Shown here in pieces: positions 31,151 through 59,258 of a stretch of DNA of 64,000 bases. Made by a program: the position numbers and the translations under genes. Every line of letters starts with the position of its first letter. Within the stretch, counting starts at the first letter, position 1. Below the pieces are notes generated by a model that did no database searches, had not been told where the DNA came from, and saw nothing but the letters and a program-made list of their open reading frames with translations. The stretch covers positions 992,001 to 1,056,000 of the forward strand of contig NW_026889774.1 in assembly GCF_033153115.1 (NCBI RefSeq), in the 5' to 3' direction. Source of the DNA: Saccostrea echinata (lineage: Eukaryota).

Positions 31151-32524
31151 ATGAACGTACACACAGACAGGCTTGTCACTCTCATATCTCAGCTACAGTA
31201 TGAGCTTGACTCAACAAAAAGAAAGCTTCAGTCAGAAAAAGAAGAAAAAGAAAAGGCATTAACAAGGTAAAATCACTTATTTTGCAATATTTTGCCAATA
31301 TTTTTTAAAGCTGGACTTACCTTAATTTAAAAAGTGAGAAGGGATACTGTACGAGAATAACAAAAGAAAGCGGTGTAAGTAAATTAAAACAAAAAAATGC
31401 TTTCATATTTTCAAATAATTTTACAATTACATTAATTTTCAGATTGAGTTTTATAGCTGGATCTAAGCTTACTCATAATAATCCAGCAATCTCTGACCTA
31501 TCTGATGAAAACAGACCTCAGAAAATTGGTGAAAAGTTCAATGAACTATATGACAATCAATGGACAGATTCAATAGACATTCTCTCTGAAAGCATGGATG
31601 AGAAAGAAGCGGTTCTTAAAATTCGAGCAGTACTTGAGGTAACTAAAATTCATTTTTATTATCCGCTTGGAACTCCTGAAATGTTTCATGTATGCTTGCA
31701 AAAAAGTCTGAAATGTTCTACCGATAAATTTTTTACACAAATATTGAAAAACTATTGAGATGATTTTTTTTTTTATATCATACCAGTATAGTTTCAACGA
31801 AATTTTTTCTCTTTGTTTTCAGTATGTTTACCAGAAAACAAAACGTGCTTCTGAGGACCAGTATCGAAGCTTACAAAACGCACTGTTCCAGGTAATTAAC
31901 ATAATCCAGCAATGTCTTTTTTTTCCCCATTTTAATTGAGAAAGAACAATAATTGGTCCGATGTGCATTGTTTATATTTTCTGTTGTAGAGAGACTTAAG
32001 GAATTCGGAGACAAAGAATTTCATTGCAATTTACAAGAAAATTAGTGAACTACAGAAGGACGTGTCCGAGTTGTCAATTAAAAATGCAAAGCAGGTTTGT
32101 AGTACTGTAAATTGTATATAAAAAAAGTAAAAACCCTCTAAGCATTTAAAATCAGTTGATCTGGAAACAAATAATAAAAATGTTAGCTATGCATTCAGTA
32201 ATGAAAAAGTAATATAAGTATCTTTATTTTCAGTTTTTAAGAGAGGATCCAGACTTTATGCTGCCATTTGAAATTGTCATGAATTGTTGTGAGTCATTCG
32301 TGGACATGTGTATAGAACTTTGTTGGATGATGCATGTCCAGGATCCGCCAATGGTTTTAGATTTTGGTTCATCGGAAATAGTAGACAAAAACATGTTTAG
32401 ACTTTTTACTAGAAGTGGTGAGATTGTTGATTTTGTTGTGTGGCCTGCTGTCCTTCTGCACGAAAACGGACCTCTTGTTCAGAAGGGTGTTGTCCAACCC
32501 AAGAAAACGTCAAAACAAAGATAG
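31151..32524 (+). CDS. Mieap (mitochondria-eating protein/SPATA18) C-terminal-domain-like protein 1 (about 258 aa; exons 31151-31266, 31443-31638, 31823-31891, 31990-32094, 32234-32524)
   Basis: 777 nt in frame. Short coiled coil (..EKEEKEKALTR), then LSFIAGSKLTHNNPAISDLSDENRPQKIGEKFNELYDNQW, and C-terminal CIELCWMMHVQDPPM..VVWPAVLLHENGPLVQKGVVQ. Recognised from memory as the MIEAP domain pattern. Confidence 0.85.
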
Positions 32525-56800: not shown

Positions 56801-59258
56801 TTTATTTAAAGGCTGGAAAGAAAAGTTTCTGATCTCCANNNNNNNNNNNNNNNNNNNNNNNNNNNNNNNNNNNNNNNNNNNNNNNNNNNNNNNNNNNNNN
56901 NNNNNNNNNNNNNNNNNNNNNNNNNNNNNNNNNNNNNNNNNNNNNNNNNNNNNNNNNNNNNNNNNNNNNNNNNNNNNNNNNNNNNNGCCTAGCTTTATTG
57001 TATTGTGTATGGGTTTTTAGCAGACCTTTTTTGTATTCATATGAAGCAGAATTTGTCCAAAATCTTATACATGAAAAGAAGAAAACACTTGCTGTGGCCT
57101 TCAACTCGACATTTAGATATATCAACGACGTATTGTCAATTAACAATGGATATTTCCATTCTTATGTCGATACGATATATCCAGGTGAGCTTGAGAAAAA
57201 AGATACCACAGAGTCTGACACATATGTGTCATATTTAGATAGTTTACTTGAAAAAGACGTTAATGGTAATCTAACAACCAAGCTTTATGATAAACGTGAT
57301 GACTTTAACTTTTCAATCGTCAACTTCCCTTACTTATTCAGCAATGAGCAATATACCTTCATCACCTGCATACGGGGGTTTATATCTCTCAGTTAATTCA
57401 ATACGCAAGAGCATGCTCTACGTATGTACAATTTCTAAAACGAGGTAAGTTATTGACAAACAAGTTGATGAAACAAAAATATCAGCAGTCTCGTTGAAAG
57501 TCATCATTTTGTAAGTTCTGTGGTCGAAACAATGACCTTGTCAGCAAATACAATTTATCATTGAATCAAATGCTGACTGACGTTTTTCATACTAATTGTT
57601 AGGCCATTATTTACACACTGAATTGTCGACGGATTTTTCCTTTATTTCCCGATCATGACAAGGAGCACACGGCGGGTGTGACAGGTCGACAGGGGATGCT
57701 CACTCCTCCATGGCACCTGAGCCCACCTCTGATGTTTTGGAGGACTTTTGATCTTGAATACTGCTCGTTATCTCCATATATTTCATGTACATCTATATTT
57801 TAATGTTGTACCTTTAAAATGTATATTTTCTTACAGCTTAGCTATGGAAAAAAGAAACTTTGAAGAGGAAAAAAAGGAGAAAGAGAAAGCACTTACAAGG
57901 TTATTTTTTTTTTATCTTATTTATGTACTATTAAAAAACATATTTCCTAATTTTTTTGTTTTTTGTTTTGTTTTTGTTTTTTGTTTTTGCAAATAATTAT
58001 GTTTTCTAATAAAATCATGATGAAATGAAAAATGAAAAAGTATCTTTCAAGCAAGCTAATTTGATTTTTTTCTCAAATATAATAATAAATTAATAGTATA
58101 CATCAGAATACATTTGAGAAAAATGAATAAGTTTGAATAGTAATTTGAAATATTACAGATTAAGTGCCGTAGCTGGGGATAAACTGAGAGTCAATAACCC
58201 AGGGATAGCTGATTTGTCTGATGAGAACCGACCAAACAAACTGGCAGAAAAATTCAGTGAACTGTACGACAACGAATGGACTGAATTGTACGAAGTTTTA
58301 GAAGAGAGTGGACAAACGGAAGAGGACATCATTGGGAACTTGCTGCAAATATTGCAGGTAACAGAATTTTTCTTAAATCTATATTTGTGAGTGGTAAAAC
58401 GCTTCCATCATATAAATGTGAAAGAGTATAGCATTGCAAATGTTCAAATTTGTTTGATTTGATAATTTGTTTCATTTGTAGGAGACTTACAACTCTAGTA
58501 ACAATCTTGCGGAAAATCAACGCAGAGAATTAAAAAAAGTAATTTTACATCCTGCAAACGTAGGGTCAAGGGAGGTAAGTCAGTCATAAAATTGTGTAGT
58601 TGAATCAAAATCAAGTTAAAAAATAAGGGACAGAAATACATTTTAGTTGGAATTTCAACTCTTTTAAAAACAAGATATTTAGAAAATGAATTATGTTGTA
58701 GGACATCAAACCTCCAGAGGGAATATTGTCTAAAATCACTGATATTCAGAAACAGACAGCATCAATTGTTTTTGGAGATGTCAGAAAAGAAATTGTAAGC
58801 CCTTTATTCTCTTTTGATTATTTTTGGAATAACATTTTCTTTACAAGATGCATAATTAGATCTAGAGAGACTGGTTCTCTAGGTAATTAAAATTTTGGGG
58901 GAGATTTAAATCTTTAAAATACTTATCATATTTTGCTATAACATGATTAGCCCTTTCTGCCATAAATATTTTTACGTGTGTGCTATTGTAGATGGAGAGC
59001 AATAAACTCATCTCCGATGGAATGAATGAAGTGAAGAGAAAATACGTAGAAAGATGTATTCAGCTGTGTTGGATGATGGCTATCCAGGACCCCCCGATGC
59101 ATTTGGATTTTGGACCTTCAGCGAATTCAGAGGCTGACAAAAACGTGTACAGAATGTATACTAAACAAGGAGACAAAGTAGATTTTGTTGTGTGGCCTGC
59201 TGTATTTCTTCATAACCAAGGACCCTTAGTCCAGAAAGGTGTACTACAGCCAAAGTAA
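50873..59258 (+). CDS. Mieap-C-domain-like protein 4, long form with Cys-rich/amphipathic N-terminus (about 443 aa; exons 50873-51123, 54236-54361, 55643-55768, 56425-56487, 56617-56667, 57837-57899, 58159-58357, 58482-58574, 58702-58794, 58992-59258)
   Basis: Ten GT-AG exons sum to 1332 nt (phases 2,2,2,2,2,2,0,0,0) and are open throughout. The 3' five exons are clearly homologous to genes 1-3 (EKEKALTR / NNPGIADLSDENRPNKL..ELYDNEW / CIQLCWMMAIQDPPM..VVWPAVFLHNQGPLVQKGVLQP). Linkage of the 5' exons rests on phase continuity and splice-site quality. An N-gap lies in intron 5. Confidence 0.75.
52173..53485. mobile_element. Nested long-TIR element inside the 52061-54057 transposon
   Basis: ATCGCAAATCTTGCTTGAAAGTATACACTAC..GATGCGTTGAG.. 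is mirrored by ..CTCAACGCATC..GTAGTGTATACTTTCAAGCGAGATTTGCGAT; imperfect arms of about 150 bp. No TSD identified. Confidence 0.7.
53575..53825. repeat. Tandem array of about 31-bp units with GACTAACCCT core
   Basis: About 8 diverged units, alternating ..ATCTCT..GGTGC and ..ATC.GTC.AAA.GTGTG types. Confidence 0.7.
54571..54960. mobile_element. Kolobok-type MITE (TTAA target)
   Basis: TTAA-GAACCCTCTCTACAC ... GTGTAGAGAGGGTCC-TTAA. Confidence 0.7.
54991..55572. mobile_element. Second TTAA-flanked element (Kolobok-like, older)
   Basis: TTAA-GAACAAGGAACGGTTT ... AAACCGTACCTTCTTCT-TTAA imperfect TIRs. Confidence 0.5.
56839..56986. other. Assembly gap (N run)
   Basis: Ns in sequence. Confidence 1.
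57020..57780 (+). mobile_element. Penelope-like retroelement fragment in an intron of Mieap-like 4
   Basis: FLYSYEAEFVQNL..FRYINDVLSINN..YPGELE.KDTTES..TKLYDKRDDFNFSIVNFP. Near-colinear with the 27 kb copy, including the 3' flank. Confidence 0.88.

What the first reader, a model, noticed from the sequence alone, without database searches (positions are those of the whole stretch)
31151..59258. Birth-and-death array of Mieap-domain genes with swappable N-termini
Seen: four intact same-strand genes and two dead exon copies within 28 kb. All four share a core (EKE.ALTR-LS..AG.KL..NNP.I.DLSD.NRP.K..E.F.ELYDN.W ... C..LCWMM..QDPPM ... VVWPA..LH..GPLVQKGV.QP). Established: vertebrate Mieap/SPATA18 is a single, longer, p53-inducible mitochondrial quality-control protein with extended coiled coils. 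Here genes 1-3 keep only a ~38-aa coil, gene 2 starts MGC, and gene 4 has a large Cys/Trp-rich module. Inference: a lineage-expanded system in which one conserved effector domain is sent to different membranes by variable N-termini. That pattern is typical of stress or immune effector families. This is the strongest candidate for an undescribed system in the window.
Basis: partly seen in the sequence, partly recalled or inferred. Interest (0 to 1): 0.78.

Follow-up and report, generated by a model that had tools for sequence, protein, structure and literature searches.

The report
Oyster Mieap-domain gene cluster
This is a real tandem cluster of Mieap-domain genes in a rock oyster, one of many such clusters in a gene family already known to be hugely expanded in bivalves, so it is tidy but ordinary and its function is still untested.

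Summary
Window 31151-59258 carries four same-strand, multi-exon genes whose last exons match Pfam MIEAP (PF16026) at 47-56 bits against a cut-off of 27, plus two dead last-exon relics. The window is Saccostrea echinata. All four genes are already RefSeq models named "uncharacterized protein". The array continues with two more genes 3' of the window.

Lineage expansion of Mieap genes in bivalves is already in print (Regan et al. 2021, PMC8382680: 53.1 genes per bivalve against 0.6 elsewhere). This genome has at least 75 MIEAP exon matches.

The paralogues are old and under strong purifying selection, with orthologues in other oyster genera. They do not look like fast-turnover genes. The "MGC" start of gene 2 is one recent change: the second genomic copy and the S. 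cucullata orthologue read MDC.

One Cys/Trp exon of gene 4 lies in its mRNA and in frame. Its upstream start exon is unproven, and gap 56839-56986 cuts an exon of gene 4.

New here: the whole array exists twice on the contig, as an inverted copy 5.4 Mb away. It could be a haplotig or a duplication. The scan noted that copy, and a GrpE-like/HSPA12 idea, on other DNA. My fold searches give GrpE as top hit, never significantly.

The parts
31151..32524 (+). Gene 1 (RefSeq LOC133191853, 258 aa). Exons: 31151-31266, 31443-31638, 31823-31891, 31990-32094, 32234-32524.
   Evidence: Three-frame reading and GT-AG sites. The exons equal P0232. The last exon hits PF16026 at 55 bits.
36510..37952 (+). Gene 2 (LOC133192473, 263 aa, starts MGC). 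Exons: 36510-36625, 36777-37041, 37213-37317, 37647-37952. Exon 36777-37041 equals exons 2+3 of the other genes (196+69 nt), so that intron is lost.
   Evidence: Identical to P0186. PF16026 at 55.6 bits for the last exon and 76 bits for the whole protein. Copy B has the same intron loss.
40839..42621 (+). Gene 3 (LOC133192474, 271 aa). Exons: 40839-40951, 41255-41450, 41694-41762, 42062-42166, 42289-42621.
   Evidence: The exons equal P0236. PF16026 at 54.1 bits.
44509..45149 (+). Dead relic 1 of a last exon like that of gene 3. Pieces: 44509-44571 and 44903-45149. It carries in-frame stops and a frameshift near 44989.
   Evidence: tblastn and three-frame reading.
46392..46628 (+). Dead relic 2 of a last exon like that of gene 3. 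It has two in-frame stops and the conserved LCWMM..QDPPM stretch is lost.
47570..47736 (.). Assembly gap 1, between relic 2 and the candidate first exon of gene 4. No exon abuts it.
   Evidence: Copy B does not align anywhere between 47110 and 57017, so nothing was looked up for it.
50873..51123 (+). Candidate first coding exon of gene 4. It holds an ATG and 83 codons plus 2 nt, with 10 Cys, and ends at a GTAAGT donor. Its phase fits both Cys/Trp exons. It is not tested by RNA and is not in the RefSeq model.
   Evidence: for sequence, phase and composition. There is only weak pattern likeness to the first exons of O. edulis and C. virginica relatives (E about 1.8).
54236..54361 (+). Cys/Trp exon copy 1 (126 nt, 42 codons, phase-symmetric). 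No RNA support.
   Evidence: 85% identical to copy 2 over 187 nt, with AG/GT sites. Depth was zero in 4 of 4 runs (bin 54188-54384).
55643..55768 (+). Cys/Trp exon copy 2 (126 nt; 4 Cys and 3 Trp in 41 residues). It is present in gene-4 mRNA and in frame.
   Evidence: Run X1 contig (record 4, 1490 nt) lies on 55646-55766, then 58157-58355, then 58992-59300, with 0-1 other letters (table 8). Frame check.
56425..56487 (+). Gene 4 coil exon (63 nt).
   Evidence: Splice sites and frame. The length fits the 210 nt that the X1 contig holds between the Cys/Trp exon and 58157.
56617..56667 (+). Gene 4 coil exon (51 nt). It holds the Met (56639) that RefSeq uses as the start of its 258-aa model.
56812..56838 (+). 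Gene 4 exon that runs into assembly gap 2. Its 3' end and donor site are unread.
   Evidence: table 5c.
56839..56986 (.). Assembly gap 2, inside gene 4. It covers the end of an exon and the start of an intron.
56998..57396 (+). Reverse-transcriptase-like fragment of a repeat, in the intron just after gap 2. It is not part of the gene product.
   Evidence: The paralogous ORF at 27371-27910 hits RVT_1 weakly. RNA-contig depth is very high at 56946-57930.
57837..59258 (+). Gene 4 conserved core (LOC133191854). Exons: 57837-57899, 58159-58357, 58482-58574, 58702-58794, 58992-59258.
   Evidence: Exact peptide matches to P0015 and splice sites. PF16026 at 47.2 bits for the last exon and 77.1 bits for P0015. 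Spliced contigs were seen in runs X1, X2 and X4.

Best explanation
This is one of many tandem clusters of the bivalve-expanded Mieap-domain family (Pfam PF16026) in Saccostrea echinata. It is a six-gene, same-strand array. Four genes lie in the window and two follow 3' of it. Two dead last-exon relics lie in the middle.

Shown:
- Each protein has a variable N-terminal part.
- Next comes a long helix ending in the conserved EKEKALTR-LS..AG motif.
- Then comes a compact, confidently modelled MIEAP domain: a helical bundle followed by a small beta subdomain.
- The paralogue types are old, shared with other oysters, and under strong purifying selection.

Inferred:
- The conserved helix-plus-domain unit does one common job. 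Most likely it oligomerises through the helix and binds a partner through the MIEAP domain. The partner could be an anionic lipid, as proposed for human Mieap, or a protein.
- The N-terminal part sets where that happens.
- Genes 1-3 would be soluble minimal forms.
- Gene 4, when transcribed from its upstream exon, would add Cys-rich segments that could be S-acylated and hold it on a membrane.
- Gene 4 may also give the short 258-aa form from an internal start.
For: Family membership:
- Searches give PF16026 matches of 47-77 bits, full-length over the profile.
- One search finds 1256 representative proteins at E <= 0.001.
- In one search, 73 of 499 candidates score E <= 1e-20, and all named ones are bivalve proteins.

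Genome-wide expansion:
- One search gives 75 exon matches, 23 of them on this contig.
- It is published: PMC8382680 (passages read) reports OG24 with 807 genes, 53.1 per bivalve against 0.6 in other taxa.

Gene models.

Array extent: one search finds genes at about 66.5-69.0 and 75.2-76.7 kb in window coordinates, and none in the 16 kb upstream. One search assigns them.

Structure:
- One search gives an AlphaFold2 model of P0186 with mean pLDDT 91.5 and pTM 0.78.
- It has a helix at 3-49, a helical bundle, and strands at 203-252.
- No segment falls below pLDDT 50.

Constraint and age:
- One search gives dN/dS of about 0.07-0.10 with synonymous sites near saturation.
- One search is a last-exon tree of 23 rows. 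Genes 1/2 group with C. virginica and S. cucullata proteins. Gene 3 lies beside a C. gigas protein at an unresolved (open) fork. Gene 4 groups with C. virginica, C. angulata and O. edulis proteins. Gene 5 groups with a S. cucullata protein.

N-terminal variety.

The Cys/Trp exon is in gene-4 mRNA and in frame.

Human Mieap's hydrophobic, structured C-terminal half is proposed to bind cardiolipin-type lipids (PMC10845071, passages read).
Against: - No localisation, acylation, lipid-binding or partner data exist for any of these proteins. The mechanism is inference.
- The Cys-rich exons are not hydrophobic enough for a clear transmembrane helix, and S-acylation cannot be predicted reliably from sequence.
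- The only 5' extension of the Cys/Trp exon seen in RNA (run X2, one 300-nt contig, 55492-55766) is unspliced genomic sequence. It carries an in-frame stop 14 codons upstream and no ATG. Some transcripts would therefore translate only the short form, and the Cys/Trp exon could be mostly 5' UTR.
- Exon 54236-54361 had no RNA depth in 4 of 4 runs.
- Genes 1-3 lack the long disordered regions and the second coiled coil that drive condensate formation in human Mieap (against PMC10845071), so they may not work like Mieap at all.
- Expression of genes 1-3 was not tested here.
Confidence: 0.6

Rival explanations
1. The MIEAP domain is a GrpE-like module. On this reading these proteins are co-chaperones, such as nucleotide-exchange factors or adaptors, for Hsp70-type ATPases. 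The partner might be the atypical HSPA12 family, which is also expanded in bivalves. The variable N-termini would place that activity at different sites, much as BAG-family proteins do (the BAG comparison is recalled, not tested).
For: - Foldseek against the PDB put GrpE/GrpEL1 chains first for two independent models.
- For the whole protein, 7 of the first 8 rows are GrpE, with best E 0.33.
- For the last-exon model, ranks 1-10 of 28 are GrpE, from Thermus, E. coli, human, Mycobacterium, Geobacillus and an integrative GrpE-DnaK model. The best has E 0.15, probability 0.80 and TM 0.37-0.39. The next rows fall to probability 0.02-0.04.
- The overall layout is the same: a long helix, a helical bundle, then a small C-terminal beta domain.
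- PMC8382680 lists both Hsp70 (68.1 per bivalve against 4.4) and Mieap among the largest bivalve expansions.
- Earlier notes of this scan propose the same idea from HSPA12/Mieap gene pairs elsewhere in this genome. Those are unchecked leads, not support.
Against: - No Foldseek row reached E <= 0.001 in either search, and rmsd values are 9-19 A.
- No GrpE Pfam hit appears for any exon or protein.
- A profile search of PDB sequences found only coiled-coil noise.
- No Hsp70 (PF00012) match lies on this contig among 44 genome-wide matches. HSPA12 is divergent, however, and may escape that model.
- No stop-free frame of 180 aa or more that could be an Hsp70 lies between -16 and +94 kb.
Confidence: 0.2
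2. One reading: a fast birth-and-death stress or immune effector family, inducible by pathogens, with N-termini swapped to aim one effector at different membranes.
For: - Two dead relics lie inside the array.
- Gene content differs sharply between the two genomic copies in the middle of the array.
- The last exon of gene 3 is only 90.9% identical between copies, while the flanks are 97-98.8% identical.
- N-terminal variety and cassette isoforms are seen in relatives.
Against: - dN/dS is about 0.07-0.10 between genes 1-3.
- Each paralogue type has orthologues in other oysters, so most births are old.
- MGC is a single change specific to the window copy.
- GAAANNGAAAC has 0 matches in the window. 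None of the 16 GAAANNGAAA matches lies within 500 bases upstream of the ATGs at 31151, 36510, 40839 or 50873.
- The only expression reports I found are gill enrichment in a mussel (PMC5549309) and a cadmium response in Dreissena (PMC11036304). Neither is immune-specific.
Confidence: 0.15
3. Part of the apparent copy number is an assembly effect. On this reading the second, inverted copy of the whole array at C25:6.35-6.47 Mb is the other haplotype of the same locus, left uncollapsed and misplaced. The two copies would then be alleles with structural differences, not paralogous arrays.
For: - One search shows colinear alignment from window -13278 to +86287. Identity is 98.8% over 23 kb on one flank and 97-98% over 15 kb on the other.
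- Colinear copies of the same large repeat insertion at about +165 kb suggest the block is longer still.
- Exons of genes 1-2 are 95-100% identical between the copies.
- Oyster genomes are highly heterozygous (general knowledge).
Against: - The two copies are on one scaffold, inverted and 5.4 Mb apart.
- The centre is only 70-75% identical or unalignable, with different genes. That is extreme for alleles.
- RefSeq annotates both copies as separate loci.
- Read depth was not tested.
Confidence: 0.4

Closest known systems
Bivalve-expanded Mieap orthogroup (OG24 of Regan et al. 2021, Genome Biol Evol, PMC8382680)
   Same: It has the same Pfam domain and the same taxon (bivalves), with tens of copies per genome. 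This genome has 75 exon matches and the paper reports 53.1 genes per bivalve.
   Different: In the passages I read, the paper treats the family only as a count and a tree. It does not describe this array, the N-terminal classes, the Cys/Trp cassette exons or the duplicated block.
Vertebrate Mieap / SPATA18
   Same: It shares the C-terminal structured MIEAP domain, matched end to end (profile 1-194 of 195), preceded by a coiled-coil helix.
   Different: Human Mieap is a single 538-aa protein with four disordered regions and two coiled coils that drive condensates (PMC10845071). Genes 1-3 here have 258-271 aa, one helix of about 47 residues and no low-confidence segment. Regulation by p53, mitochondrial location and lipid binding are untested here.
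GrpE / GrpEL1 (Hsp70 nucleotide-exchange factor)
   Same: It shares the order of elements: a long helix, a helical bundle, then a small beta domain. It is the top Foldseek hit for two models.
   Different: No hit is significant (best E 0.15). There is no sequence or profile similarity. No Hsp70 neighbour was seen at this locus.
BAG-family co-chaperones (recalled from general knowledge, not tested)
   Same: The logic of the architecture is the same: one conserved C-terminal partner-binding domain behind diverse N-terminal targeting parts.
   Different: The fold and family are unrelated. This is a comparison of working principle only.

Membership tests
MIEAP domain family (Pfam PF16026) | Match to the Pfam model above its gathering score (27 bits) | tested here: met
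   the last exons alone score 55, 55.6, 54.1 and 47.2 bits; whole RefSeq proteins score 66-77 bits.
MIEAP domain family (Pfam PF16026) | The whole domain is present, not a fragment | tested here: met
   profile positions 1-194 of 195 are matched in P0186 and P0015 (window genes 2 and 4) and in P0185 and P0188 (the copy-B counterparts of genes 1 and 3). The window's own gene-1 and gene-3 proteins were not scanned whole; their last exons pass.
Mieap/SPATA18 orthologue in the functional sense | Long disordered regions and two coiled coils N-terminal to the domain (PMC10845071) | tested here: not met
   Genes 1-3 have only 38-39 residues before the conserved core. The AlphaFold2 model has one helix at 3-49 and no segment with pLDDT below 50.
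Mieap/SPATA18 orthologue in the functional sense | p53-inducible, mitochondrial, binds cardiolipin-type lipids | not testable with these tools
   This needs expression, imaging and lipid-binding assays.
Bivalve-expanded Mieap orthogroup | Bivalve genome with tens of copies, in clusters | tested here: met
   75 matches, 69 reaching the C-terminal end of the profile, on 11 contigs; all named relatives are bivalve proteins.
GrpE-like fold | Significant structural match to solved GrpE | tested here: inconclusive
   GrpE chains rank first, but E is 0.15-1.7 and TM 0.2-0.39. VIA-align libraries were unavailable.
GrpE-like fold | Sequence or profile similarity to GrpE (PF01025) | tested here: not met
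   No GrpE row appears (E <= 1; E <= 0.01) or 56 (PDB sequences, E <= 10).
Hsp70/HSPA12-Mieap gene pair (earlier notes of this scan) | An Hsp70-type gene next to the Mieap gene | tested here: inconclusive
   0 of 44 PF00012 matches lie on contig C25; no long open frame of that kind between -16 and +94 kb. A divergent, intron-rich HSPA12 could escape both checks.
N-myristoylated/palmitoylated MGC proteins | Gly at position 2, conserved among orthologues | tested here: not met
   Gly2 occurs only in the window's gene 2. Copy B (P0233) and the S. cucullata protein P0234 read MDC. That is 1 of 3 sequences with Gly.
Fast-evolving immune-type birth-and-death family | Relaxed or positive selection and young paralogues | tested here: not met
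   dN/dS is about 0.07-0.10 with pS 0.69-0.78; orthologues exist in other genera.
Fast-evolving immune-type birth-and-death family | Pseudogene relics and copy-content differences | tested here: met
   two relics; copy B has an extra intact gene and a frameshifted copy like gene 4.

The most novel reading that the evidence does not exclude
The MIEAP domain is a diverged GrpE-like partner-binding module for Hsp70-type ATPases. The bivalve expansion has built a set of differently anchored co-chaperones: bare, acylated through Cys/Trp cassette exons, or carrying long hydrophilic heads. This set would have co-expanded with the atypical Hsp70s (HSPA12). The two diverged copies of this array would then be structurally different haplotypes of a locus that varies in gene content between individuals.
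Probability: 0.12. Interest if true: 0.75.

Novelty: new member of a known kind. Interest (0 to 1): 0.35.

Why it matters
The Mieap family is among the largest bivalve-specific expansions, yet no bivalve member has a tested function. This array is a compact, well-annotated test set. It holds three minimal 258-271-aa forms, one gene that may switch between a short form and a Cys-rich long form, and two forms with long hydrophilic heads.

The high-confidence model of a minimal form (pLDDT 91.5) gives a handle on a domain that has no solved structure. If the weak GrpE likeness is real, it would link two co-expanded bivalve families and suggest a mechanism for human Mieap as well.

The duplicated, internally diverged block matters for anyone counting gene copies or calling presence/absence variation in this assembly.

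Tried and rejected
Catalytic Cys-His pair:
- I considered that the conserved Cys of LCWMM and the His of LH..GP might be catalytic.
- I rejected this because neither is among the columns conserved at 90% or more in 71 sequences. The near-invariant ones are W, Q, PP, G, VWP, G and KG.

Transmembrane helix in the Cys-rich exons: not supported. 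The best 19-residue hydropathy is 1.41, 0.87 and 0.85.

Homology of the upstream exons of gene 4 to relatives' N-termini: only weak tblastn rows against a 10-kb target (E 0.026-1.8). I treat this as likeness of composition, not proof.

ISRE/IRF element at the 5' ends: not found with a generic core. I did not know the 14-mer of the earlier notes and so did not test it.

HSPA12 neighbour: not found, but the test is weak.

ESM Atlas look-up of the Cys-rich N-terminus of an O. edulis relative: no usable hit.

Profile search against PDB sequences: only coiled-coil matches to the N-terminal helix.

Extent of the duplicated block beyond what I fetched:
- Two own-genome DNA searches were swamped by a large repeat.
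- They gave only an indirect hint of colinearity at about +165 kb.

Run X21 (raw reads, organism C): its reads differ consistently from the window at many places in the exons of gene 4 (table 3). It is another species or a paralogue, and I did not use it as expression evidence.

Literature:
- Searches for Mieap with oyster, bivalve, Crassostrea or Mytilus, and for PF16026, found five papers that mention the family in molluscs.
- I read passages in four that mention it in bivalves; the fifth, on the snail Biomphalaria (PMC13619432), I saw only as a search listing.
- None of the four describes N-terminal classes or this locus.

Full report
**What is there**

The window is G000:C25:992001-1056000 of a 923-Mb, AT-rich genome (about 31% G+C). 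The species is Saccostrea echinata. RefSeq proteins of that species match the window's exons exactly, and they come from a contig of the same length, 29,015,514 bases.

Between 31151 and 59258 the + strand carries four multi-exon genes. Reading the three frames and the splice sites gives:
- Gene 1: 31151-31266, 31443-31638, 31823-31891, 31990-32094, 32234-32524 (258 aa).
- Gene 2: 36510-36625, 36777-37041, 37213-37317, 37647-37952 (263 aa).
- Gene 3: 40839-40951, 41255-41450, 41694-41762, 42062-42166, 42289-42621 (271 aa).
- Gene 4 core: 57837-57899, 58159-58357, 58482-58574, 58702-58794, 58992-59258.

All these introns are GT-AG and the exon lengths add up to whole codons. The readings equal RefSeq models P0232, P0186 and P0236, and for the core of gene 4, P0015. 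Gene 2 has lost the intron between exons 2 and 3: its exon of 265 nt equals 196+69.

**Family**

Searched exon by exon, 4 of 4 last exons pass the Pfam MIEAP gathering score (47.2-55.6 bits against 27). Two of three second exons give sub-threshold MIEAP hits (18 and 18.5 bits). The candidate upstream ORF of gene 4 gives nothing meaningful (8 peptides). Whole RefSeq proteins match profile positions 1-194 of 195 at 66-77 bits.

A scan of 1.84 billion representative proteins with the last exon of gene 1 found 1256 hits at E <= 0.001. A search with P0015 found 73 proteins at E <= 1e-20 among 499 candidates. Every hit that carries a name is a bivalve protein, mostly called "uncharacterized".

**Dead copies**

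tblastn with the exon peptides and direct reading show two relics of a last exon like that of gene 3.
- Relic 1 is 44509-44571 plus 44903-45149. It has stops, a frameshift and an insertion of about 330 bases.
- Relic 2 is 46392-46628. It has two stops and the central motif is destroyed.
- Neither has relics of the other exons.

**The gaps**

Gap 47570-47736 lies between relic 2 and the candidate first exon of gene 4. No exon abuts it, and its continuity is untested.

Gap 56839-56986 interrupts gene 4. The exon starting at 56812 runs into it. A 1490-nt transcript contig of run X1 joins 56835 to 57835 with 7 letters absent from the window. The two sides are therefore parts of one mRNA, in order. 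The lengths fit: 63+51+33+63 = 210 nt between the contig's pieces. The end of the exon and its donor site are unread. I did not fill either gap.

**The N-terminus of gene 4**

The RefSeq model (258 aa) starts at a Met at 56639. The X1 contig begins at the acceptor of the 126-nt exon 55643-55768. It runs with 0-1 differences through all downstream exons to beyond 59300 (table 8). The frame stays open through that exon, which has 41 residues with 4 Cys and 3 Trp. Runs X2 and X4 also hold spliced contigs of the core exons. That makes 3 of 3 same-species runs, from 2 studies.

Three things remain unshown:
- Its twin exon 54236-54361 (85% identical over 187 nt) had zero depth in 4 of 4 runs.
- A candidate first exon (50873-51123; ATG, 10 Cys, GTAAGT donor, matching phase) lay outside the 5.9 kb I could lay reads on.
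- The only RNA extension upstream of 55643 (X2, one contig, 55492-55766) is unspliced and carries an in-frame stop.

Gene 4 may therefore make a short form (the RefSeq one), a long Cys-rich form, or both.

Related genes support the long architecture. Annotated isoforms in Ostrea edulis differ by a 49-aa Cys/Trp-rich insert. Those in S. cucullata differ by Cys-rich segments. Those in C. virginica differ by short inserts.

**N-terminal variety and the MGC start**

Among 53 fetched relatives with the ALTR-LS motif, the part before it ranges from 35 to 923 residues and holds 0 to 24 Cys. In this array:
- Genes 1-3 have 38-39 residues.
- Gene 4 has more.
- Genes 5 and 6 have about 155 and 194 hydrophilic residues. 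They lie beyond the window at about 65.3-69.0 and 73.8-76.7 kb.

The MGC start is unique to the window's gene 2. The second genomic copy (P0233) and the S. cucullata orthologue (P0234) read MDC, and gene 1 and the C. virginica relative read MN/MD. It is one recent change, so it is a weak basis for a targeting claim.

**Age and selection**

Counted exon by exon and then summed, genes 1-3 differ at pS 0.69-0.78 and pN 0.13-0.22. That gives dN/dS of about 0.07-0.10, with dS saturated, so the ratio is rough.

I built a maximum-likelihood tree of the 72-residue core of the last exon (23 rows, 2 of 18 inner branches strongly supported). It places each array member with proteins of other oysters. The paralogue types therefore predate the genus. 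This is a slowly turning-over, constrained family.

**A second copy of the whole array**

DNA of the array matches C25:6.41-6.42 Mb on the opposite strand. After fetching 120 kb there, blastn shows a colinear inverted block from window -13278 to +86287.
- One flank is 98.8% identical over 23 kb. The other is 97-98% identical over 15 kb.
- The regions of genes 1-2 are 93-96% identical, and the region of gene 3 is 84-88%.
- The centre (43-66 kb) is 70-75% identical or not alignable.

Copy B has counterparts of genes 1, 2, 3, 5 and 6. It also has an extra intact 395-aa gene with a Cys-rich N-terminus (P0173) and a frameshifted copy like gene 4. RefSeq annotates both copies. Shared repeat insertions hint that the block reaches about +171 kb. 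I could not resolve whether this is an uncollapsed haplotype or a true inverted duplication.

**Structure**

AlphaFold2 on P0186 with 71 aligned relatives gives mean pLDDT 91.5 and pTM 0.78. The model has a helix at 3-49, a helical bundle, and a small beta subdomain at 203-252.

Foldseek against the PDB gives no hit at E <= 0.001. GrpE/GrpEL1 chains take 7 of the first 8 rows. A second model of a natural last-exon-only protein (pLDDT 88) again gives GrpE as ranks 1-10 of 28, with best E 0.15 and probability 0.80.

At this locus I found no Hsp70 match on the contig, no long open frame of that kind and no ISRE core upstream of the genes.

**What is known**

- Regan et al. 2021 (PMC8382680, passages read) list a Mieap orthogroup of 807 genes, 53.1 per bivalve against 0.6 in other taxa.
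- A mussel atlas reports gill enrichment of the domain (PMC5549309, passages read).
- A Dreissena proteome study reports cadmium-responsive spots (PMC11036304, passages read).
- An oyster paper lists one Spata18 gene in a table (PMC13280272, one passage read).
- Human Mieap drives condensates through disordered regions and two coiled coils. Its hydrophobic, structured C-terminal half is proposed to bind cardiolipin-type lipids (PMC10845071, passages read).
- A search for PF16026 found no paper.

**Verdict**

The thing is a member cluster of a known, published expansion, and it is already annotated.

The idea that N-termini aim a common domain is reasonable and partly backed by exon structure and by isoforms in relatives. 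It remains untested, and the "immune-type birth-and-death" flavour is contradicted by strong constraint and old paralogues.

The most useful new points are:
- the truncated RefSeq model of gene 4 at an assembly gap;
- the Cys/Trp exon seen in its mRNA;
- the window-copy-specific MGC start;
- the intron loss in gene 2;
- the duplicated, internally diverged block.

Noticed in passing
window -13278 to +86287 (C25:978723-1078287) against C25:6351538-6470000, opposite strand: The whole region, array included, is present twice on the contig as an inverted block 5.4 Mb away. The flanks are 97-98.8% identical but the centre is 70-75% identical or unalignable, with different gene content. It could be a haplotig or a segmental duplication; this is unresolved.
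   Followed up: partly
window 36777-37041: Gene 2 has lost the intron between exons 2 and 3 exactly (265 = 196+69 nt). The second genomic copy shares the loss.
   Followed up: yes
window 42289-42618 against C25:6411739-6412068: The last exon of gene 3 is only 90.9% identical between the two copies (16 synonymous and 11 non-synonymous codon differences). The other exons of genes 1-3 are 95-100% identical.
   Followed up: partly
window 34060-34380: A repeat of about 335 bases with at least 37 copies at about 90% identity on many contigs, lying between genes 1 and 2.
   Followed up: no
window 51235-51957: A repeat of about 720 bases with at least 39 copies at 95-99% identity across the genome. 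It sits just after the candidate first exon of gene 4 and looks like a young, active element.
   Followed up: no
window 56946-57930: RNA-contig depth is very high here (up to about 23,000 summed word depth in X1), over a repeat with a reverse-transcriptase-like ORF (56998-57396) in the intron of gene 4. A paralogous ORF lies at 27371-27910 on the - strand.
   Followed up: no
window 14228-15942 and 26940-27890: Two more dispersed repeats: 1.7 kb at 88-98% identity and about 0.94 kb at 90-95% identity, each on many contigs.
   Followed up: no
window 3899-4363 (+) and 19879-20403 (-): Two ORFs encode proteins with one strongly hydrophobic stretch followed by a basic segment. They look like single-pass membrane proteins and have no Pfam family above threshold.
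   Followed up: no
window about 49000-49130: A long dinucleotide (TA-rich) microsatellite, which reads as YIYIYI in the ORF list.
   Followed up: no
window +83678 to +84916 (locus L005), - strand: A stop-free frame of 413 codons whose start looks like a seven-helix receptor. Not tested.
   Followed up: no
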